Below are positions 15,733 through 53,107 of a stretch of DNA of 64,000 nt, in pieces; position 1 is the first letter of the stretch, and each line of letters opens with the position of its first letter. The notes under the pieces are model-generated. The model had not been told where the DNA came from and ran no database searches. It saw only the letters and a list, made by a program, of their open reading frames with translations. The position numbers and the translations under genes were made by a program. The stretch is taken from IMG/VR virus record IMGVR_UViG_3300042484_002457, positions 1 to 64,000 of that record; one strand, written 5' to 3'.

Positions 15733-15829
15733 AAACAACCTAGGACCATCTTTGCACGCCGGGGTCAGGCAAGAATTCTAGACTAGACCTACTACAATAT
15801 TCATGCAAATATGTATACTTTTGTAGTAC

Positions 15830-15858
15830 TTGACCAAAAATTCCCATTTTGCTATAAT
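15830..15858 (+). promoter_or_regulatory. sigma70-like early promoter
   Basis: TTGACC-N17-TATAAT with extended TG. Confidence 0.85.
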
Positions 15859-15886
15859 ACAAGAACAGTAGCAAAAAGGAGTCGCA

Positions 15887-16091: not shown

Positions 16092-16292
16092 ATGTATACT
16101 TTGTTGTACATCACTACAATGGCGTTCATGGGCACTTATGCTGACCTGCCCAGTTGCGAAAACGCTGTTCGCGAAATTGTAACTGTGCAAATGAACCCGC
16201 CAGGGCAGCGTTTGCCTGCTGTAAACGAAAGCATTAATTTACGGATTGCCATGCAAAAATCGTTTGTATGTGTTCCGGTGAAAAAAGGTTGA
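16092..16292 (+). CDS. Small hypothetical protein
   Basis: 66-aa ORF directly downstream of the previous gene. Confidence 0.6.
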   Translation: MYTLLYITTMAFMGTYADLPSCENAVREIVTVQMNPPGQRLPAVNESINLRIAMQKSFVCVPVKKG

Positions 16293-16317
16293 CCAGAATT
16301 TCCCAATTTGCTATAAT
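16289..16317 (+). promoter_or_regulatory. sigma70-like early promoter
   Basis: TTGACC-N17-TATAAT with extended TG. Confidence 0.85.
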
Positions 16318-16349
16318 ATACACATAGCAAAGCAAAACAGGAGCCAGAA

Positions 16350-16526: not shown

Positions 16527-16530
16527 GCGA

Positions 16531-16559
16531 TTGACCAATAAATCGCAATCTGCTATAAT
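16531..16559 (+). promoter_or_regulatory. sigma70-like early promoter
   Basis: TTGACC-N17-TATAAT with extended TG. Confidence 0.85.
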
Positions 16560-16589
16560 ATATTTTTAACGCACAAAAAGGAGCCAACT

Positions 16590-18914: not shown

Positions 18915-20380
18915 AACAAGCAACCATTGTTATCCGCGACGAAGTAAACATCAAAATTGAGGGCTTGGATCTTGACATGCGCAAGCGCCTGGTCACAGCA
19001 TTCAAATACGAAAACCCTGCCGCACGTTACATGCCAGCGGTGCGTCTAGGAAGATGGGACGGCAAGATAGCATACTTCCAGTTAGGAGGCAGTACCTACA
19101 CAAACTTGCTACCTGAAATCATTCCCATCCTTGAGAAGTTTGATTATGATATTGAACTGGATGACCAACGCGACTATTCAAACACTTTTAACTTTGAACA
19201 GGTACGTGAGGATTCATTTGCACATGTGAAGTGGCCCAAAGGACACCCTGCCACAGGTGAACCCATAATGATGCGGGACTACCAGGTTGAAATCGTAAAC
19301 AACTTTTTAGCCAATCCGCAATGCCTGCAAGAAGTAGCAACAGGTGCAGGTAAAACAATCATGACAGCGGCCCTGAGCAATGCAGTTGCACCTTATGGGC
19401 GAAGCATTGTGATTGTGCCCAACAAGAGTCTAGTAACACAAACAGAAAAAGATTACATCAACATGCAACAAGATGTTGGTGTTTATTTTGGCGATAGAAA
19501 AGAGTACGGCCGCACTCACACTATTTGCACCTGGCAGAGTTTGAATATCTTGTTAAAGAATACCAAGGCAGGGGTAGGCGACTGTACCATTGGTGAGTTC
19601 CTTGAAGGCGTTGTATGTGTTATTGTAGACGAAGTACACATGGCCAAGGCAGATGCACTGAAAACTCTGCTGACAGGTGTAATGGCTAGAGTGCCAATTC
19701 GCTGGGGTTTGACCGGAACTATTCCCAAAGAGAAGTTTGAGAGTCAAGCATTGTTAGTAGGACTTGGTCCTGTAGTTGGTCGCTTGAGTGCCAACGAACT
19801 GCAACAGCAAGGTGTTTTGGCCAACTGTCACGTGAATATTGTGCAACTGGTAGATCATGTGGAGTACAAAGAATATCAAAGCGAGCTTAAATACTTGCTG
19901 GAAGAGTCGGGTCGTTTAGACACCATGGCTGAACTTATACGCAAGGTAAACGAAACTGGAAATACGTTGGTGTTGGTTGACAGAGTTGCGGCGGGCCACG
20001 CATTATTAGAACGCCTAGGCGATTGTGCTGTGTTTGTATCGGGCGCAACAAAAGGAACAAAAAGACAAGAAGAATATGACAAAGTTGCGGACAGCGTTGA
20101 TAAGATTATTGTGGCTACCTATGGTGTTGCCGCTGTGGGCATTAACATCCCTAGGATTTTTAATCTGGTTCTTATTGAACCTGGAAAAAGTTTTGTCCGT
20201 GTTATCCAAAGCATTGGCCGCGGCATAAGAAAAGCAGAGGACAAGGATCATGTTCAAATTTGGGACATTACCAGTACCTGCAAGTTTGCCAAACGTCATT
20301 TGACCAAACGCAAGGCCTTCTATAAAGAAGCTAACTATCCTTTCTCTGTAGAAAAGCTGGAGTGGATGAAAATAGCATAA
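18911..20380 (+). CDS. uvsW: UvsW-like SF2 DNA helicase
   Basis: RDYQ, ATGAGKT, DEVH, GLTGT, VGINIP, QSIGRGIR. Confidence 0.92.
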   Translation: MKQATIVIRDEVNIKIEGLDLDMRKRLVTAFKYENPAARYMPAVRLGRWDGKIAYFQLGGSTYTNLLPEIIPILEKFDYDIELDDQRDYSNTFNFEQVREDSFAHVKWPKGHPATGEPIMMRDYQVEIVNNFLANPQCLQEVATGAGKTIMTAALSNAVAPYGRSIVIVPNKSLVTQTEKDYINMQQDVGVYFGDRKEYGRTHTICTWQSLNILLKNTKAGVGDCTIGEFLEGVVCVIVDEVHMAKADALKTLLTGVMARVPIRWGLTGTIPKEKFESQALLVGLGPVVGRLSANELQQQGVLANCHVNIVQLVDHVEYKEYQSELKYLLEESGRLDTMAELIRKVNETGNTLVLVDRVAAGHALLERLGDCAVFVSGATKGTKRQEEYDKVADSVDKIIVATYGVAAVGINIPRIFNLVLIEPGKSFVRVIQSIGRGIRKAEDKDHVQIWDITSTCKFAKRHLTKRKAFYKEANYPFSVEKLEWMKIA

Positions 20381-21191
20381 GTTTTTTGCAGTTATCACCA
20401 TGCCAGCGATTGTAATTTGACTGTCCCCCAACTATACTAACGCAATGCGGGCACTTAAATTTAGGCTTTGGTCCTTGTAGTTTAGCAACTGTTTCTGCGG
20501 AATGTGCAACTCCTCGGTTGTGCGCAGGCTTACCTACTAACCAAGTTGGCGTCTTCCCTTTTTTAGCGTCAGACATTTTTTGTCTCGATTCAACAGTGTG
20601 CGTGGTTGTTTTTCCTTTGTTACCAGCAGATATCTTTTGTTTTGTTTCTTCTGAATGTCGATAGTGCTTGCGTGATTCTAAAATTTTAGCAACTGTTTCG
20701 GGAGAAGTAATTTTACCTTTATGTGCTGCTGACAATTTTTGTTTTGCTTCGGCAGAATGTGTTTTTCCTTTAAAAGCTGACAGCCTGCCTGCGCAAGATT
20801 TAGACAGTTTTTCTCTTGTCTCTTTGGATACAGTTTTACCTTTGTGCAATTGTGATGAGTTTTTTGCCACTTCTATCTTGGCAAGATTGAAAGCACTTCC
20901 TTTGGATATTTTTCTTTGTTGGGCAACATTTTTTGTTCTTAACATCATCCACAGTGCATACCACATACTTTTTGTATGAGCAGGATCAATGGTCATCCGA
21001 GGTAATAAAATATGAACAAGGCGATGTTCTTTTGCAGTAAGTCTTATTAGATTATTTTGATCATTTGCCCCACCTAGACTTTTTGGGATAATGTGATGTT
21101 TTTCTGTATAAGTTTCTTTTGGCAAATCTCTTGACTTTGCACGATTAATGATGCTATAATAACATTTAGTATATTTGTTTTGTAAATACAT
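20331..21191 (-). mobile_element. Free-standing HNH homing endonuclease with NUMOD3 repeats and C-terminal Zn ribbon
   Basis: EKHHIIPKSLGG.N...NL..LT.KEH...H; repeated H(S/T)xE(T/A)+xK+S; CPHC...RWHGDNC; antisense to the operon. Confidence 0.85.
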
Positions 21192-21260
21192 GGCTGATAG
21201 TTCCTTGTAAACTGTTAGAGTCAATGGATCCTGCAAGATCGCGATTGACATTTTTATTTA
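21192..21260 (-). promoter_or_regulatory. Conserved two-hairpin endonuclease leader, copy A, with TAAATA promoter
   Basis: TAAATA-AAAAT-GTCAAT-CGC-GATC-ttgcag-GATC-C-ATTGAC-TCTAAC-AGTT-tacaagg-AACT-ATCAGC-C-ATG. Confidence 0.8.
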
Positions 21261-21775
21261 TGACGGAGAAAAAAATTCGGATCCTCACACTAGACAACAG
21301 TCACTACGACCTAGATCATCTGCCTGAAGAAATTGATGACATGCGTTTTGCTATCTTGGACAACAGCAATCCTGCAGATCCTGATTATCTTTTTATCCCG
21401 CTAATTTTTCTAGAGAGTTTTAACAGCCCTGCTTTGGTACTGCGCATTGGTACACAAACAATCAAGATGCCCATGGATTGGCAGGTACTAATTGGTGAAC
21501 CTGATGTAGGCGATCTAGAAGTGTTACCACTGACATCAATCAACGATCGCGGCTTTAAAGTATTTCAATTCAATCCCCTTACCAGCTATCGCCCCAGCTT
21601 TCCTGACATTGAAATTTTAGATGTGTATCATGATGTTTCATGGTACGCACCCAAACTCAAGAACGGACAAATGCTAGCAGTACCCATTAACGATGAACCT
21701 GAACCTGACTGTATCTATTTTGTAAAAGACGTCAGCCGCAACTGCGAAATTGTCAACTACAACAAGGCTTGGTGA
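21260..21775 (+). CDS. Conserved-looking phage hypothetical protein
   Basis: RILTLDN...MRFAILDNS...FIPLIFLESF; start taken at ATG 21260. Confidence 0.7.
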   Translation: MTEKKIRILTLDNSHYDLDHLPEEIDDMRFAILDNSNPADPDYLFIPLIFLESFNSPALVLRIGTQTIKMPMDWQVLIGEPDVGDLEVLPLTSINDRGFKVFQFNPLTSYRPSFPDIEILDVYHDVSWYAPKLKNGQMLAVPINDEPEPDCIYFVKDVSRNCEIVNYNKAW

Positions 21776-35693: not shown

Positions 35694-36582
35694 ACTTGCG
35701 GCACCCAAGCCCAGTAAACAAATTGGCAAAGTATTCGAAAGTTACTTTGGTCGCACTATCAAATTTGATCAACTTGATCGTGGTCAAGCTCGACTCATGT
35801 TGAGAAAAGTGCAAGGGCTATTGAGCGAACAGCGTAACTCTGTAACTCGTCATCAAAGCGAGCGCAACCCTGCGTACTTGAAGCTGGTTATGATGGAGTC
35901 TGCCTTGGTAGCTCGTATCAAAGAAGAACAAATACCGGTGCCCCCAACAACCACTACACCCGCGCCAGGTGCAAAAATTGAAGTCAAGGACCCCAAGTTG
36001 GCCGCTGCACTGAAAAAGAGCACAGCTGGTCAGCAGTTGAATCCTGAAGAACAAAAGCTTGTGGCCGGAGCTGCCATGATGAAGGCCGAAAGTCGCCTAC
36101 GTCGAGCAATGACACGCCTGAACGAAAGCGAAGTTCAACAAGCACAAGTGGTTCTTGCTGCCCAAGACATGGTGGACCGCATGCAAGGCATGTTGGAAGA
36201 TGTTAGCGAACTACAATTCAAAGAACTACCTGCTCTAATAGACTCTATCAAGAATCAAGTCGGTATTGATCAAGCAACACAGTTCAACGCTGATGCTACC
36301 GCAGCCCTGGCAGGACTATTACAGAACATCCAAGGCGCCAAACAACAGCTTGACTCTGCATTGAATGTGGTAACTGGTGCAGCGCCTGCTGGTGGAGTTG
36401 ATGCTGCTGCCGATGCTGCTATGGCTGGTGCCGACATGGGAGCTGCTGCTGGTGCCGACATGGGCGCTGCTGGTGCCGAAATGGATGCTGCTGACATGGG
36501 CGCTGCTGATGATTTAGCTGCTGAGTTACCTGAACCTGGTGCAGAACCAACTGGTGCTGTACTTGGACGTGGCAAGAGATAA
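35680..36582 (+). CDS. Probable prohead core/scaffold-like protein
   Basis: MKLNEL; LNESEVQQAQVVLAAQDMVD; AGADMG repeats at about 36405-36510. Confidence 0.5.
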   Translation: MKLNELAAPKPSKQIGKVFESYFGRTIKFDQLDRGQARLMLRKVQGLLSEQRNSVTRHQSERNPAYLKLVMMESALVARIKEEQIPVPPTTTTPAPGAKIEVKDPKLAAALKKSTAGQQLNPEEQKLVAGAAMMKAESRLRRAMTRLNESEVQQAQVVLAAQDMVDRMQGMLEDVSELQFKELPALIDSIKNQVGIDQATQFNADATAALAGLLQNIQGAKQQLDSALNVVTGAAPAGGVDAAADAAMAGADMGAAAGADMGAAGAEMDAADMGAADDLAAELPEPGAEPTGAVLGRGKR

Positions 36583-44659: not shown

Positions 44660-45760
44660 ATGTCAAAACAACAATATGATTTAAAAACAAAAACAGACTA
44701 TCTCAATAGAAAGATGTTTCTAGACCCAGCAGGGCCAGTTACCATTCAACGATTTGAGGAGGTTAAATATCAGAAACTAGTCAAGTACGAACAAGAAGCA
44801 CGTGGCTTCTTCTGGGTACCAGAAGAGATCTCATTAACCAAAGACTCACAAGATTTCAAAGACGCTAGTGATACTGTCAAGCACATCTTTACATCAAACT
44901 TGTTACGCCAAACTGCCTTGGACAGTTTGCAAGGACGTGGTCCCAGCCAAATCTTTACACCTGTTGTTTCAATTCCTGAACTGGAAGCCTTGGTCTACAA
45001 CTGGACATTCTTTGAAACAAACATTCACTCACGCAGTTACAGTCACATTATACGTAACATCTACAACGTGCCCAAGGATGTGTTTAACACCATCCATGAC
45101 ACACAAGAAATTGTGGACATGGCCAGTTCAGTTGGCAACTACTACGAAGCATTGCACATGGTCAACTGTCGTAAGCAACTAGGCGAGTCTGTTACAGAGC
45201 ACGAACATATTCGAGCAATCTATATGGCTCTACATGCTAGCTATGCGCTAGAAGCATTCCGCTTCATGGTTAGCTTTGCCACAAGTCTTGCCATGGTAGA
45301 GAATCGCATCTTTATGGGCAATGGTAATATTATTGGGCTAATCTTACAAGACGAGATTCTGCACAAAGAATGGACAGCTTGGTTGATCAATCAAGTGGTC
45401 AAAGAAGATCCGCGCTTTGCCAAGGCCAAAGTAGAATGTGAAGCTGAAGTGTACCAGATGTACTTGGATGTGATCCGTGAAGAAAAAGCCTGGGCTGAAT
45501 ACTTGTTCAAGAAGGGTCCAGTTATTGGTCTTAATGCAAATATTCTTAAAGACTTTGTGGACTACACAGCAGTAGGTGCACTGAAAGAAATTGGCATCAA
45601 GTATCTTGAGCCTGCTCCGCGTAACACACCAATCCCGTGGTTTAACAAGCATGTGGACACAAGCAAGAAACAATCGGCCTTACAGGAAAACGAATCAACC
45701 AATTATGTAATTGGAGCGATGAGCGAGAATATTGATTACGACGAGTTACCAAATCTATGA
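44660..45760 (+). CDS. nrdB: Ribonucleotide reductase class Ia beta subunit
   Basis: FFWVPEE, LDSLQGR, ETNIHSRSY, LEAFRF..SF, DEILH, QE.E...Y. Confidence 0.96.
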   Translation: MSKQQYDLKTKTDYLNRKMFLDPAGPVTIQRFEEVKYQKLVKYEQEARGFFWVPEEISLTKDSQDFKDASDTVKHIFTSNLLRQTALDSLQGRGPSQIFTPVVSIPELEALVYNWTFFETNIHSRSYSHIIRNIYNVPKDVFNTIHDTQEIVDMASSVGNYYEALHMVNCRKQLGESVTEHEHIRAIYMALHASYALEAFRFMVSFATSLAMVENRIFMGNGNIIGLILQDEILHKEWTAWLINQVVKEDPRFAKAKVECEAEVYQMYLDVIREEKAWAEYLFKKGPVIGLNANILKDFVDYTAVGALKEIGIKYLEPAPRNTPIPWFNKHVDTSKKQSALQENESTNYVIGAMSENIDYDELPNL

Positions 45761-46053
45761 TATTGTCAAGACTGGAGTTTATAGATTACTTCAAAACTTT
45801 AGACTCCAGGATTGACGGCAACGATCCTGATTGTCCGCTGTGGATACCCGAGCATGATAGCAAACCATCTAGTTGGTTTGTGCGAGTAGTACCCATTAAG
45901 GCACATAGATTCAAGCGGAAATATTACGATTGGTGCAACAACACACTAGCAGATGTTGTTCGCTGTTATAGCAGTGATCCAGACCACCAACAAGAGTGGT
46001 GGGGATTTACCAATCAAAAGGATATTGTACCATGGTTGTTAAAGTGGTCTTAA
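45757..46053 (+). CDS. Hypothetical protein
   Basis: 98 aa, ATGA overlap with nrdB. Confidence 0.6.
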
Positions 46054-46689
46054 AATCCATCCTTTAACAACTTTGCGTTTTGCCTTAACTAAGTTGTTCA
46101 CGCCGCCACTGTCGAGCTTATATGTAGTTCGAAAGTCATACTGAGTCATACTAACTTCCTCGTTGGTGATGGTATTAAAGAAACAATATATAGTATGATC
46201 ATACCGTACACTGCCTGAACCAGTATATAATTTGCGATATAGATCTTTGTTTTTCTGACTGTGCCCCGGATTAGCAGGCCCGGACATACGTAAGCTAGCA
46301 GACAGATTAGTACGACCAAGCAAAGATGTGCTAGTATTTGGGCGTTTTTGTCCTGTTTGTTTTTTTATGTTTATAGCAACACGATGGGCGATTTGTTCTT
46401 TAGTTTGTTTCATCCCGCAAGATCCGTCGCCGCCGTTTGTTTTATTTCGAAGAATACCTGTGCCAATATCTTTGCGACCATACCAGCGTATCATCCTGCG
46501 TTCAATAGCTAACGCACCAACATCGGTTAGATTACTTTCAAGTATTATAATTCTTGAACGATCAACTGGAGGATGAACTTCGCCTTTTCCTTTGATCCAG
46601 GCTCGACGATCTTTGCCTTTTCCTATATAATAAGGAGTTCCGTCTTCTCGCAAATATGCATAGACGTAAAAATTGTTAGTTAAATACAT
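46039..46689 (-). mobile_element. Free-standing GIY-YIG homing endonuclease
   Basis: [34 protein letters not shown](D/E)G; antisense to the operon. Confidence 0.85.
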
Positions 46690-46756
46690 TGCTGATGTTC
46701 CTCCAGAACGTTAGAGTAGTTGGGAACGCCAATTCCGCGAACTACACCTATATTTA
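46690..46756 (-). promoter_or_regulatory. Conserved two-hairpin endonuclease leader, copy B, with TAAATA promoter
   Basis: TAAATA-TAGGT-GTAGTT-CGC-GGAA-ttggcg-TTCC-C-AACTAC-TCTAAC-GTTC-tggag-GAAC-ATCAGC-A-ATG. Confidence 0.8.
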
Positions 46757-46773
46757 TGAAAGAAAATAAAAAT

Positions 46774-46998
46774 ATGACAAAAGCTATAGTCTGGAGCAAG
46801 GACGGTTGTAGCCACTGCGTTCAAGCCAAGAGTCTATTAGAGAGCCGCGGTATTGAATATGAAGAACGCAATGTAAGCCAGGACTGGACCCGAGAACAAC
46901 TATTAGAAGCTGTACCAACAGCCCGAACACTTCCGCAAATCTTCTTGAATGAAGAACATGTGGGCGGATTTACAGAACTCAGAAAGAAACTAGCATAA
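46774..46998 (+). CDS. Glutaredoxin
   Basis: CSHC, TLPQIF, VGGF.EL. Confidence 0.92.
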   Translation: MTKAIVWSKDGCSHCVQAKSLLESRGIEYEERNVSQDWTREQLLEAVPTARTLPQIFLNEEHVGGFTELRKKLA

Positions 46999-49758: not shown

Positions 49759-49760
49759 GG

Positions 49761-49789
49761 TTGACCCAAATTTTCCAATTTGCTATAAT
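49761..49789 (+). promoter_or_regulatory. sigma70-like early promoter
   Basis: TTGACC-N17-TATAAT; spacer nearly identical to the one at 16289. Confidence 0.85.
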
Positions 49790-49819
49790 AGTGGCATACA
49801 AAGCAAAAAGGAGACCAAA

Positions 49820-52173: not shown

Positions 52174-52400
52174 GCAAACGCATTGGACCTATTACATTGG
52201 ACGGCGACGCAGCTGATCGCATCACTGTGCTCACGCTGAAAGAACAACGATCCTACCTCAAGAAAGAACTTGCAGAGTGGAAGAAAAATCCACGTACAGA
52301 TACCAATCCTGAGGGTGTTTGGATGCACCCTGAAGACGTGGAACTCAACACTCGCATGATTGAATCGTTGAACACTGTGATCAAATACTTTGGCGGATAA
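52170..52400 (+). CDS. Hypothetical protein
   Basis: 76 aa, coupled to the ligase. Confidence 0.65.
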   Translation: MSKRIGPITLDGDAADRITVLTLKEQRSYLKKELAEWKKNPRTDTNPEGVWMHPEDVELNTRMIESLNTVIKYFGG

Positions 52401-53034
52401 ATGAACAACGATCAAAGTGCCAACGAGTCATAGCAGATATTCCTCCAGTTTTGCTGCAATGCGGGCAAGTGGCTAATGGTTTAGATTTTCCTCTATTGCT
52501 ATTACCAATTTTTTCTTTTGTTTCTTCAGAAATAACTTGCAACGATCTTGCCGCCTTAATTTTTTGTTTAGTTTCATTGGTATGAGCTCGGTGGTGTCCG
52601 GTCCCTTTTCCAGTTCTTCCTTTGCTAATTTTTATCCTATCACCAACTGATCGAGTCTTGCCTTTCCAGAAACCAACTGCACCCTTGTGTCCTTTGTTCG
52701 GAGGGGGTCGTCCAAGCCCTGCAATAGAAATCTTATTTCTTGATTCGGCGCTTAATTTTCCTCGGGCATCACCAGTTTCTTCTTTAAGATTAGCCCATTC
52801 ATTGCTTTCGACTATATTCCAAAGATTACTATAAAACAATCCCCAGTATGAAAATTCATCTTTAGTATGACACTCTTTTATAATTTCTGTGCGATAATCT
52901 TTTCCGTGTTTTTTTAAATGTGATTTCCAATAAGTGCCTGATCCAGGATACTTGTGAGGATCTTTTGACTCGGTCTTGCCAAGATATTTGAGACCAGTAA
53001 CATTGTGGGTTTTGACGTACAGGTAAATAGTCAT
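52381..53034 (-). mobile_element. Free-standing GIY-YIG (Seg-like) homing endonuclease with NUMOD3 and C-terminal Zn ribbon
   Basis: IYLYVKTH..TGLKYLGKT, Y.GSG.YW..HL.KHG, WANL.EE.G; CPHC...RWHFDRC; antisense to the operon. Confidence 0.85.
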
Positions 53035-53103
53035 GCTGATTGCTCCTTGTTAGCGTTAGAGTAGTTGGGGAGGTGAGATACCCGCGAACTACACTTCTAT
53101 TTA
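53035..53103 (-). promoter_or_regulatory. Conserved two-hairpin endonuclease leader, copy C, with TAAATA promoter
   Basis: TAAATA-GAAGT-GTAGTT-CGC-GGG-tatctcacct-CCC-C-AACTAC-TCTAAC-GCT-aacaagg-AGC-A-ATCAGC-ATG. Confidence 0.8.
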
Positions 53104-53107
53104 TCTC

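What the first reader, a model, noticed from the sequence alone, without database searches (positions are those of the whole stretch)
46039..46756. Endonuclease leader copy B: invariant linkers pair better on the antisense strand
Seen: on the plus strand the invariant CTGAT...GTTAG extend P3 by five pairs, two of them G-U (with one extra T in copy C). On the endonuclease-sense strand those two positions are A-C mismatches. All three elements lie antisense to their plus-strand neighbours, so both strands are likely transcribed. Inference: the functional fold may be in the antisense RNA or in ssDNA (G-T pairs, as at hairpin recombination or transposition ends), or the A-C mismatches are a deliberate recognition or destabilising feature.
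Basis: partly seen in the sequence, partly recalled or inferred. Interest (0 to 1): 0.6.

Follow-up and report, generated by a model that had tools for sequence, protein, structure and literature searches.

The report
Antisense-strand fold in homing-endonuclease leaders
A ~78-base element at the start of homing-endonuclease genes in large lake-water phages is a widespread three-stem structure whose pairing rules show selection on the strand opposite the gene, so an antisense RNA (less likely single-stranded DNA), not the messenger, is probably the working molecule.

Summary
CTGAT (46692-46696) and GTTAG (46710-46714) extend the small hairpin by five pairs on the + strand, two of them G-U. On the endonuclease-sense strand those two positions are A-C.

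The element is not a local curiosity. The genome has 5 copies. More than 150 distinct copies occur in uncultured phage contigs, with up to 16 per jumbo-phage genome. It precedes nucleases of several unrelated families.

Across 154 distinct copies every non-Watson-Crick pair in the two informative helices is A-C on the sense strand (G-U on the antisense strand). None is the reverse. Both helices also show compensatory double changes. Pairing is therefore selected on the strand antisense to the endonuclease gene.

On both strands the fold is flanked by a TAAATA box, then N4, then TG. TAAATA matches the late-promoter type read by the gp55 sigma factor. Five other carrier genomes encode gp55.

My best reading is a cis-antisense RNA covering the ribosome-binding site and start codon of the endonuclease mRNA. 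No transcript data were available, so RNA versus ssDNA and the exact function remain inferred.

The element has no Rfam match and no match in 50,697 deposited phage genomes.

The parts
46039..46689 (-). Copy B homing-endonuclease ORF (216 aa). The N-terminus is GIY-YIG-like but has no Pfam hit. The start codon is at 46687-46689.
   Evidence: Relatives are annotated as homing, seg-like or intron endonucleases.
46681..46686 (.). ORF-side hexamer: TAAATA on the + strand, TATTTA on the sense strand, just after the ATG. It is either the 5' arm of closing stem P0 or the -10 box of an antisense late promoter.
   Evidence: TATTTA lies 5-7 nt from the linker in 94/105 copies, in all three reading frames, and in 136/154 copies.
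46690..46691 (+). Conserved TG just before CTGAT on the + strand. It mirrors the TG before P1 on the sense strand and is the candidate +1 of an antisense RNA.
   Evidence: On the sense strand, C is present in 149/154 and A in 137/154 copies at these two positions.
46692..46714 (+). P3 plus its 5-bp extension. CTGAT pairs with GTTAG (two G.U) around GTTC/GAAC. The loop carries CUCC, the complement of the endonuclease Shine-Dalgarno.
   Evidence: Covariation is shown.
46715..46715 (+). Single junction A between P3ext and P1.
46716..46745 (+). P1 (GTAGTT/AACTAC) stacked on GG/C-G-C-G, with two bulged G, and on the P2 hairpin.
46746..46750 (+). Pyrimidine-rich spacer (ACCTA) between P1 and the box.
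46751..46757 (-). ATAAATA box on the sense strand (CATAAATA with 46758), a T4-late-type -10 element for the endonuclease gene. Its complement TATTTAT is the U-rich tail, or the 3' arm of P0, on the + strand.
   Evidence: ATAAATA lies next to a gene start in 25/29 cases in this genome. gp55 is present in other carrier genomes.
21183..21262 (+). Copy A of the same element. Its endonuclease ORF is 20331-21191 (-), HNH + NUMOD3.
53024..53105 (+). Copy C of the same element. Its endonuclease ORF is 52381-53034 (-), with NUMOD3. It has a bulged extra T after CTGAT.

Best explanation
The element is a mobile control cassette of about 78 nt, spanning 46681-46758 in copy B, that sits at the 5' end of free-standing homing-endonuclease genes.

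Shown:
- It is a conserved three-stem fold: P3 plus a 5-bp extension, P1 stacked on P2, and perhaps an A/U closing stem P0.
- Its pairs are kept by compensatory change.
- Its tolerated wobbles are G-U only on the strand antisense to the endonuclease gene.

Inferred:
- The working molecule is an antisense RNA that covers the Shine-Dalgarno and AUG of the endonuclease mRNA.
- This RNA holds endonuclease translation down, in the manner of IS10 RNA-OUT or SymR/SymE.
- It exposes the anti-Shine-Dalgarno CUCC in the P3 loop for a loop-loop contact.
- The mRNA copy of the same sequence is left weakly folded by the A-C mismatches, so it remains translatable when the antisense RNA is scarce.

More speculative:
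- Both strands read TAAATA-N4-TG in front of the fold, which suggests two face-to-face gp55-type late promoters.
- One promoter would start the mRNA at the first G of P1.
- The other would start a roughly 70-75 nt antisense RNA at the G before CUGA.
- That RNA would end after the P1/P2 hairpin in the U-rich complement of the sense promoter.
For: Strand of the fold:
- P1 has 619 WC, 23 A.C and 0 G.U; the linker helix has 352 WC, 173 A.C and 0 G.U, all on the sense strand, in 105 copies.
- A symmetric parse of 154 copies gives 265 A.C against 0 G.U.
- On the CM alignment, 161 pairs are G.U on the antisense strand against 10 A.C on it.
- The core MFE is -16.6 kcal/mol antisense against -12.0 sense. 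The antisense strand is the more stable in 97/105 copies, p 4e-18.
- alifold gives -39.8 against -29.7.
- The three window copies fold to -18.6, -17.0 and -23.2 on the + strand against -17.2, -13.2 and -14.3 on the - strand.

The helices are real:
- 97.8% of pairs are standard, 16 pairs show double changes, and 0/500 shuffles reach the observed values.
- Linker variants CTATG/CACAG, TTAAT/ATCAA and CTGTT/AACAG keep the pairing.

Not a mutation-bias artefact:
- The A.C excess is the same in co-oriented and anti-oriented insertions.

Promoter reading:
- ATAAATA precedes gene starts on the same strand in 25/29 cases, against 10-64% for same-composition 7-mers.
- Five of five other carrier genomes encode a gp55-family late sigma factor.
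- The TAAATA-N4-TG arrangement is mirrored on both strands.
- The antisense P1/P2 hairpin (-9.4 kcal/mol) is followed by ACUUUUAUUUAU. The sense P3ext hairpin is only -2.6 kcal/mol.

Precedent:
- CfrI is an antisense RNA running antisense to a homing-endonuclease gene and psbA in the T4-like cyanophage S-PM2 (PMC2984593).
Against: - No transcript evidence exists. The phage is known only from lake metagenomes, and the 'RNA' runs hold only contigs that are probably DNA.
- The ORF-side box deviates in part of the copies: GTAAATA in about 20% and TAAGTA in about 10%. That is easier to reconcile with a G-U-tolerant stem P0 than with a strict promoter.
- The simple terminator scan does not flag the + strand fold.
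- In this genome the + strand genes just downstream, such as the glutaredoxin-like gene at 46774, must be transcribed through the element. It therefore cannot be a strong terminator for every polymerase form.
- No gp55 homolog was found in the window's own genome fragment, which is 58% complete.
- G-T tolerance applies to ssDNA as well as to RNA.
Confidence: 0.5

Rival explanations
1. The fold works in long + strand read-through transcripts of the phage's own genes, not as a discrete regulator of the endonuclease. It would act as a processing site, 5' stabiliser or insulator that preserves expression of the phage gene lying downstream of an antisense-inserted cassette.
For: - In this genome all five cassettes are antisense to their neighbours, and their 3' ends overlap the preceding + gene.
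- The HEG-less allele has nrdB and the glutaredoxin-like gene 13 nt apart. The HEG-bearing allele places the fold about 17 nt before that gene's start.
- A read-through RNA would contain both arms of P0. That fits the G-U-type variants of the ORF-side hexamer.
- Copy C folds with P0 closed.
Against: - 34 of 92 cassettes with a callable neighbour are co-oriented with the upstream gene. They show the same asymmetry and the same conservation of TATTTA.
- The distance from the box to the divergent neighbour's start is not fixed: median 58 nt, range about 0-280.
Confidence: 0.2
2. This is the classical phage homing-endonuclease control, as in I-TevI, segB and Aeh1 mobE. [quoted passage not shown] A late promoter lies inside the hairpin, so late transcripts lack its 5' arm. 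The A-C positions would be tolerated or deliberately weakening.
For: - The sense strand carries an ATAAATA box, a Shine-Dalgarno in the P3 loop and 3' arm, and the ATG.
- The box is complementary to TATTTA just after the ATG.
- Hairpins with TATAAATA in the 5' UTRs of metagenomic free-standing endonucleases were described and read this way (PMC2677866). The paradigm is reviewed in PMC2988022.
- In co-oriented insertions the upstream gene stops inside the box.
Against: - A fold selected in the mRNA should tolerate G-U and avoid A-C. The observed pattern is the exact opposite, 265:0.
- Some P1 variants carry two A-C in six pairs, which effectively breaks sense P1.
- The sense P3ext hairpin averages only -2.6 kcal/mol.
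- P1, P2 and P3 lie downstream of the presumed late start, so late transcripts would contain them too. This differs from the I-TevI logic.
Confidence: 0.15
3. The fold forms in single-stranded DNA of the + strand during replication, recombination or homing repair. It would be recognised there, in the way of attC sites, IS200/IS605 ends or hairpin promoters.
For: - G-T is tolerated and A-C is not in DNA hairpins too, so the tally fits equally well.
- The element ends in a short inverted repeat, TAAATA...TATTTA.
- The cassette is mobile and multi-copy.
Against: - No tyrosine or HUH recombinase or transposase accompanies it. The adjacent gene is always an HNH, GIY-YIG or PD-(D/E)XK-type nuclease.
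- As DNA the fold is marginal: -7.5 kcal/mol, MFE frequency 2%, z -1.3.
- The element overlaps a promoter-like box, a Shine-Dalgarno and a start codon, which are expression signals.
Confidence: 0.12

Closest known systems
RBS-sequestering hairpins with an embedded T4-type late promoter upstream of phage homing-endonuclease genes (I-TevI, segB, Aeh1 mobE; PMC2988022). Also the 5'-UTR hairpins with TATAAATA reported for free-standing GIY-YIG and Vsr-like endonucleases in metagenomic 'fractured genes' (PMC2677866).
   Same: - The genomic position is the same, directly in front of a free-standing endonuclease ORF.
- A late-promoter box is followed by a hairpin and then SD/AUG.
- The element is shared by unrelated nuclease families.
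[quoted passage not shown]
   Different: - Here the covariation pattern assigns the selected pairing to the antisense strand. Those elements are interpreted, and for mobE and I-TevI tested, as mRNA structures.
- The fold here is a three-stem junction lying mostly downstream of the presumed late start.
- I could not compare sequences with the 2009 figures. No supplement is held.
cis-encoded antisense RNAs that cover the SD/AUG of a selfish or toxic gene: IS10 RNA-OUT/RNA-IN and SymR/SymE (from my own knowledge), and CfrI of cyanophage S-PM2 (PMC2984593, PMC5931967).
   Same: - A structured RNA is proposed on the opposite strand.
- It overlaps the 5' UTR and start codon.
- The candidate promoter sits just inside the target ORF.
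- The target is a mobile nuclease gene.
   Different: - No transcript has been demonstrated here.
- CfrI is about 225 nt, and the covariance model finds no homolog in S-PM2.
- The mirrored TAAATA-N4-TG arrangement and the spread across four or more nuclease families are not features of those systems.
PeSL composite promoter-terminator cassettes of T4-like phages (PMC2839356, PMC4122927).
   Same: - It is a short, conserved, multi-copy regulatory module in T4-superfamily genomes.
- It combines a promoter and a stem-loop.
- It joins otherwise unrelated genes, which is consistent with recombinational exchange.
   Different: - PeSLs carry an early sigma-70-type promoter plus a terminator on one strand, and they flank hyperplastic-region ORFs.
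- This element carries a late-type box and is tied to endonuclease genes.
- Its stem-loops are selected on the strand opposite the promoter.

Membership tests
Phage HEG translational-control hairpin (I-TevI / mobE type) | T4-type late promoter (TATAAATA) immediately upstream of the endonuclease ORF | tested here: met
   A NATAAATA box is present in all 5 genome copies. The TAAATA core is present in 152/154 copies. In this genome ATAAATA is tied to gene starts. gp55 is present in 5/5 other carrier genomes.
Phage HEG translational-control hairpin (I-TevI / mobE type) | Hairpin pairing selected in the sense mRNA | tested here: not met
   All wobble or mismatch pairs in P1 and P3ext are A-C on the sense strand, 265 against 0 G-U. 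The sense fold is weaker in 97/105 copies.
Phage HEG translational-control hairpin (I-TevI / mobE type) | The late promoter lies inside the hairpin, so late transcripts lose the inhibitory arm | tested here: inconclusive
   The box is complementary to TATTTA after the ATG (P0). Both hexamers are near-invariant and the flanking seventh pair does not covary. P1, P2 and P3 lie downstream of the presumed start.
cis-antisense regulatory RNA (RNA-OUT / SymR / CfrI kind) | A transcript from the opposite strand overlapping the SD and AUG of the target | not testable with these tools
   No usable RNA data exist. The runs are lake DNA metagenomes or contigs of doubtful RNA origin.
cis-antisense regulatory RNA (RNA-OUT / SymR / CfrI kind) | Stable, conserved secondary structure of the antisense molecule | tested here: met
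   97.8% of pairs are standard, 16 pairs covary and 0/500 shuffles reach the observed values. alifold gives -39.8 antisense against -29.7 sense.
cis-antisense regulatory RNA (RNA-OUT / SymR / CfrI kind) | Own promoter and terminator | tested here: inconclusive
   TAAATA-N4-TG is mirrored on the antisense strand, but about 30% of ORF-side boxes deviate. The hairpin plus U-rich tail is only moderate and is not called by the terminator scan.
Any Rfam 15 family (including hammerhead, twister, pistol, hatchet and phage RNA motifs) | Match to a curated covariance model | tested here: not met
   Only chance-level snoRNA and lncRNA hits with E>3 on either strand.
ssDNA hairpin recombination or transposition sites (attC, IS200/IS605 ends) | Association with a tyrosine or HUH recombinase or transposase | tested here: not met
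   The adjacent ORFs are NUMOD3, HNH, HNH_3, GIY-YIG or TnsA-like nucleases. No recombinase lies in the flanks of the five genome copies.
PeSL promoter-terminator cassettes | Early sigma-70-type promoter joined to a stem-loop terminator on the same strand | tested here: not met
   No conserved -35/-10 sigma-70 pair is present at the element. The early-type TTGACC-N17-TGCTATAAT repeats of this genome lie elsewhere.

The most novel reading that the evidence does not exclude
The element is a self-contained, horizontally exchanged 'bidirectional' control cassette for selfish nuclease genes. Two face-to-face gp55 late promoters lie about 80 bp apart, and each one's complement serves as the U-rich tail of the other transcript. 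Between them a three-way-junction RNA is made from the strand opposite the endonuclease gene. This roughly 70-75 nt antisense RNA throttles endonuclease translation. The design is strand-asymmetric: G-U pairs in the regulator are A-C mismatches in the target. That keeps the regulator folded and the mRNA open. The cassette has been captured by at least four nuclease superfamilies and has amplified to 13-16 copies in jumbo phages.
Probability: 0.3. Interest if true: 0.75.

Novelty: new variant of a known kind. Interest (0 to 1): 0.62.

Why it matters
Homing endonucleases are the commonest selfish genes of large phages, and how the phage and the endonuclease limit the damage is known only from a few T4 and Aeh1 cases. 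All of those are read as mRNA hairpins.

Here one compact leader serves HNH, HNH_3, GIY-YIG and TnsA-like nucleases in hundreds of uncultured freshwater phages. Its evolutionary signature says the selected fold lies on the other strand.

If an antisense RNA is confirmed, three things would follow:
- It would be a new and abundant phage regulatory RNA class, currently absent from Rfam.
- It would be a clean natural example of G-U/A-C asymmetry used to fold a regulator while leaving its perfectly complementary target open.
- It would be a portable late-expression and insulation module.

It also warns that 5'-UTR hairpins annotated from sequence alone may be assigned to the wrong strand.

Tried and rejected
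- Rfam on both strands gave nothing.
- I considered a hammerhead-like reading of CUGAUG...CGAA on the + strand and rejected it. The GAAA and stem III features are absent, and the hammerhead models do not match.
- megablast and blastn of the region and of the leader against 50,697 deposited phages found no match.
- The covariance model found nothing in S-PM2, the host of the CfrI antisense RNA.
- It also found nothing in the freshwater phage S-SRM01. That phage's related endonuclease has a different leader, with a long-range stem around a terminator and a second TATAAATA.
- Public runs gave only lake DNA metagenomes.
- gp55 was not found in the window's own genome by the T4 protein, phrog_234 or phrog_12791. 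The record is only 58% complete, so this says little.
- P0 covariation could not be shown. The seventh pair does not covary and both hexamers are almost invariant.
- The sigma-70 promoter scan found one 10/12 match inside ORF B on the + strand (46603-46631). It comes from the YYIG codons of one protein family, and the scan found 4 matches against 3.4 expected by chance.
- The genome contigs pattern scan gave 19 hits, about what chance predicts. Only 9 are real by the covariance model, all on MAG contigs and none in an isolate genome.
- Strand-biased mutation as the cause of the A-C excess is rejected, because co-oriented and anti-oriented cassettes show the same bias.
- The supplement of PMC2677866, which holds the motif logos, is not held.
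Full report
WHAT IS THERE

The finding covers a - strand ORF of 216 aa (46039-46689) and the 70 nt in front of it. Read on the ORF's own strand, the leader runs as follows:
- CATAAATA, then 4 nt, then TG.
- A 6-bp stem P1 (GTAGTT/AACTAC). P1 encloses the invariant CGCG and a small hairpin P2.
- TCTAAC.
- A 4-bp hairpin P3 with GGAGG in its loop.
- ATCAG, then CA, then ATG.

On the + strand the linkers read CTGAT (46692-46696) and GTTAG (46710-46714). The same holds for copy A (21194-21218) and copy C (53036-53059, with one bulged T).

The window is the first 64 kb of a 209.5-kb IMG/VR phage record that is 58% complete. That record holds two more copies, near 150.2 kb and 168.7 kb.

All five copies precede - strand endonuclease ORFs set between + strand genes. 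The five proteins are not one family. A and D are HNH (A with NUMOD3 repeats). B is GIY-YIG-like without a Pfam hit. C has a GIY-like N-terminus and a NUMOD3 motif. E looks GIY-YIG-like by eye and was not scanned.

HOW WIDESPREAD

A second pattern fixed only the commonest P1 and left the box and the linkers free. It hit the limit again with many new contigs.

A covariance model built on the + strand orientation (R1) gave these results:
- 85 matches in 78 of those loci.
- 13, 2, 13, 16 and 1 copies in five other phage genomes of 219-525 kb.
- Nine true copies on MAG contigs and none in isolate genomes.
- Nothing in S-PM2 or S-SRM01.

blastn of the leader finds nothing in 50,697 deposited phage genomes. 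Rfam has no match on either strand. The phage itself is held by about 20 lake-water metagenome runs.

Of 93 complete downstream ORFs, the Pfam matches were NUMOD3 (31), HNH (13), HNH_3 (11), GIY-YIG or SegE (4), the I-TevI DNA-binding domain (2) and TnsA-like (2). One leader therefore serves several unrelated nuclease folds.

WHICH STRAND

In 105 distinct copies from the strict set, read on the sense strand:
- P1 has 619 Watson-Crick pairs, 23 A.C, 0 G.U and 0 other.
- The linker helix has 352 Watson-Crick, 173 A.C and 0 G.U.
- Linker pair 5 is T-A (40), C-G (16) or C.A (49), and never T.G.

A second parser accepts G.U and A.C on equal terms. It was run over all loci:
- It gives 154 distinct copies from 141 sources.
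- There are 31 P1 haplotypes, with 14 A.C and 0 G.U.
- There are 12 linker haplotypes, with 15 A.C and 0 G.U.
- Leaving out the near-invariant third linker pair, the count is 18:0. That is about 4e-6 under symmetry.

The linker helix is not an accident of two conserved words. The variants CTATG/CACAG, CTATT/AACAG, CTATA/TACAG, CTACA/TGCAG, TTAAT/ATCAA and CTGTT/AACAG keep it by double changes at pairs 1, 4 and 5. In the last variant the third pair is G-C.

On the model-fitted alignment A4:
- 97.8% of cells are standard pairs on the + strand orientation.
- 16 of 26 pairs show changes on both sides.
- No shuffle out of 500, and no slid register, comes close.
- The same pairs read on the sense strand give 90.8%. 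There are 161 G.U on the antisense strand against 10 A.C on it.

Energies agree:
- The core MFE is -16.6 (antisense) against -12.0 kcal/mol (sense). The antisense strand is better in 97 of 105 copies.
- alifold gives -39.8 against -29.7.
- The three window copies fold to -18.6, -17.0 and -23.2 on the + strand, against -17.2, -13.2 and -14.3 on the - strand.

P3 proper (3-4 bp) is all Watson-Crick and covaries, so it is neutral on the strand question. P2's loop-closing position is ambiguous.

A strand-biased mutation process cannot explain the excess. Cassettes antisense to their upstream neighbour (58) and co-oriented with it (34) show the same A.C frequencies and no G.U.

I take as settled, at about 0.85-0.9, that pairing is selected in a molecule with the polarity of the window's + strand.

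THE FLANKS

The sense box is ATAAATA in all five genome copies. In the unbiased set its core is TAAATA (ATAAATA about 78, CTAAATA about 15, GTAAATA about 5).

In this genome 25 of 29 ATAAATA sites lie just upstream of an ORF start on the same strand. The figure is 10-64% (median about 20%) for 7-mers of the same composition.

All five other carrier genomes tested encode a gp55-family late sigma factor, with E between 1e-21 and 5e-27. The window's own incomplete record shows none. The box is therefore very likely a T4-type late promoter. This is an inference from the known specificity of gp55 for TATAAATA, as reviewed in PMC2988022.

The complement of the box, TATTTA, recurs just after the ATG. 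It lies 5-7 nt from the linker in 94/105 and 136/154 copies, in all three reading frames (MxIY, MYL, MIFI). This is nucleotide-level conservation, not protein-level.

Both strands consequently read TAAATA-N4-TG followed directly by a helix:
- On the sense strand, T is present in 153/154 and G in 154/154 copies before P1.
- On the antisense strand, the corresponding T is present in 137/154 and G in 149/154 copies before CUGR.

Two readings are possible, and I could not separate them.
- (a) P0, a 6-bp A/U stem closing a three-way junction. RNAalifold draws it and copy C folds that way. The commonest variant, TACTTA, is again A.C on the sense strand. However, the adjacent seventh pair does not covary.
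- (b) A second, antisense late promoter. It would start an RNA at the conserved G, in the same register as the sense promoter.

MECHANISM

Shown:
- The fold.
- Its strand.
- Its link to endonuclease starts.
- Its promoter-like box.
- Its mobility. HEG-less relatives have nrdB and the glutaredoxin-like gene 13 nt apart. A HEG-bearing relative and the window carry the reverse-complemented endonuclease plus leader there, ending at the TATTTAT box.

Inferred: the selected molecule is an antisense RNA complementary to the whole 5' UTR, Shine-Dalgarno and AUG of the endonuclease mRNA.
- Its P3 loop displays CUCC(U), the complement of the Shine-Dalgarno sitting in the mirror-image loop of the mRNA. 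That is the geometry used by kissing antisense regulators.
- G-U pairs keep the regulator folded (P3ext -5.8, P1/P2 -9.4 kcal/mol).
- The same positions are A-C in the mRNA (P3ext -2.6 kcal/mol), which leaves its ribosome-binding site accessible.
- Keeping a DNA-cutting selfish gene at low expression suits both the phage and the endonuclease, as argued for T4 in PMC2988022.
- An antisense RNA running antisense to a homing-endonuclease gene is documented in the T4-like cyanophage S-PM2 (CfrI; PMC2984593, PMC5931967). It is not homologous by R1.

More speculative: the RNA is a discrete species of about 70-75 nt. It would be made from the ORF-side box and ended by the P1/P2 hairpin plus ACUUUUAUUUAU. 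Against this:
- About 30% of ORF-side boxes deviate from ATAAATA.
- The terminator scan is silent.
- + strand genes downstream must be read through the element in this genome.

RIVALS

- The fold may act in long + strand operon transcripts for the benefit of the downstream phage gene (0.2). This fits this genome but not the third of cassettes that are co-oriented.
- The classical sense-mRNA hairpin with an embedded late promoter (0.15) is what a specialist would assume. It is how similar metagenomic hairpins were read in 2009 (PMC2677866). The 265:0 tally contradicts it.
- ssDNA (0.12) fits the tally. But the DNA fold is marginal (-7.5 kcal/mol), no recombinase accompanies it, and the element is built from expression signals.

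COMPARISON AND NOVELTY

The general kind, regulatory leaders of phage homing endonucleases with a late promoter, is known. So are cis-antisense regulators and the mobile promoter/stem-loop cassettes of T4-like phages (PeSLs; PMC2839356, PMC4122927).

What seems new:
- This specific, very abundant three-stem motif, which is absent from Rfam.
- Its use by four or more nuclease families, with up to 16 copies per genome.
- The strand assignment.

I could not check whether the two motifs on the hairpin stem in PMC2677866 are the same sequences. If they are, the element was seen before but read on the other strand.

I rate it a new variant of a known kind, with interest about 0.6. The evidence for the strand is strong and the motif is common, but the function rests on inference without any transcript data.

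HOUSEKEEPING

No non-standard code, spliced model or broken toxin gene was involved.

Noticed in passing
window 968, 25470(-), 37697, 54864; also genome 68585, 108963, 163209(-): ATAAATA boxes lie only 4-7 nt before an ATG with no room for a Shine-Dalgarno, for example ATAAATA-aagtt-ATG. If the box is a late promoter with +1 about 6 nt downstream, several late genes of this phage would be leaderless or nearly so.
   Followed up: partly
window 15828-15878, 16287-16337, 16529-16579, 49759-49809: A four-copy direct repeat family reads TTGACC-N17-TGCTATAAT (extended -10). These are likely early sigma-70-type promoters and are distinct from the endonuclease leader.
   Followed up: no
window 20331-20380, 46039-46053, 52381-52400: The 3' ends of the three - strand endonuclease ORFs overlap the 3' ends of the preceding + strand ORFs by 15-50 nt (convergent overlap). 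This leaves no room for terminators. In relative L271 the two stop codons form TGATCA.
   Followed up: partly
genome G000:C1 192743-193530 (-), outside the window: A sixth HNH-type endonuclease gene (MYLINKY...) has TATAAATA, a Shine-Dalgarno and ATG-TATTTA, but none of the P1/P2/P3ext structure. It is a 'minimal' leader that keeps only the two hexamers.
   Followed up: no
L009:747-794 and L116 (same sequence): The leader is intact through P1/P2 and then fused directly to a remnant encoding the C-terminal ...NRWHFENC motif. This is a deletion derivative of the cassette. Seven other copies precede ORFs of only 4-70 aa, which are decaying endonuclease genes with an intact leader.
   Followed up: partly
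L204, L215, L224, L246 versus L271 and window 45757-46774: Relatives show several alleles between nrdB and the glutaredoxin-like gene. The two genes are either directly adjacent (13 nt) or separated by about 170, 460 or 980 nt of other inserts, or by the endonuclease cassette. The site is a hotspot. The window additionally carries a 98-aa ORF (45757-46053) absent from L271.
   Followed up: partly
co-oriented cassettes in L003-L122: When the upstream gene has the same orientation as the endonuclease gene, its stop codon usually lies inside the box. The stop is the TAA of A-TAA-ATA, or TA plus the following A. The cassette thus supplies stops in two frames.
   Followed up: no
window 36426-36511: There is a short imperfect tandem repeat (units of about 15-24 nt, TGGTGCCGACATGGG...GCTGCTG) inside a + strand coding region.
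   Followed up: no
L202:480-585 (Synechococcus phage S-SRM01, upstream of a NUMOD3 endonuclease): This is a different leader architecture. It has two NATAAATA boxes, a GC-rich terminator-like hairpin between them and a 10-13 nt long-range complement (GTGTTTGGTC...GACCAAACAC). It resembles the classical I-TevI/mobE design.
   Followed up: no
window 45689 to 46625 (joints): Metagenome contigs at 85% or higher likeness join nrdB-like sequence at 45689 to the endonuclease N-terminus and leader at 46625, skipping 935 nt. They are probably other phages with a related cassette next to nrdB.
   Followed up: no
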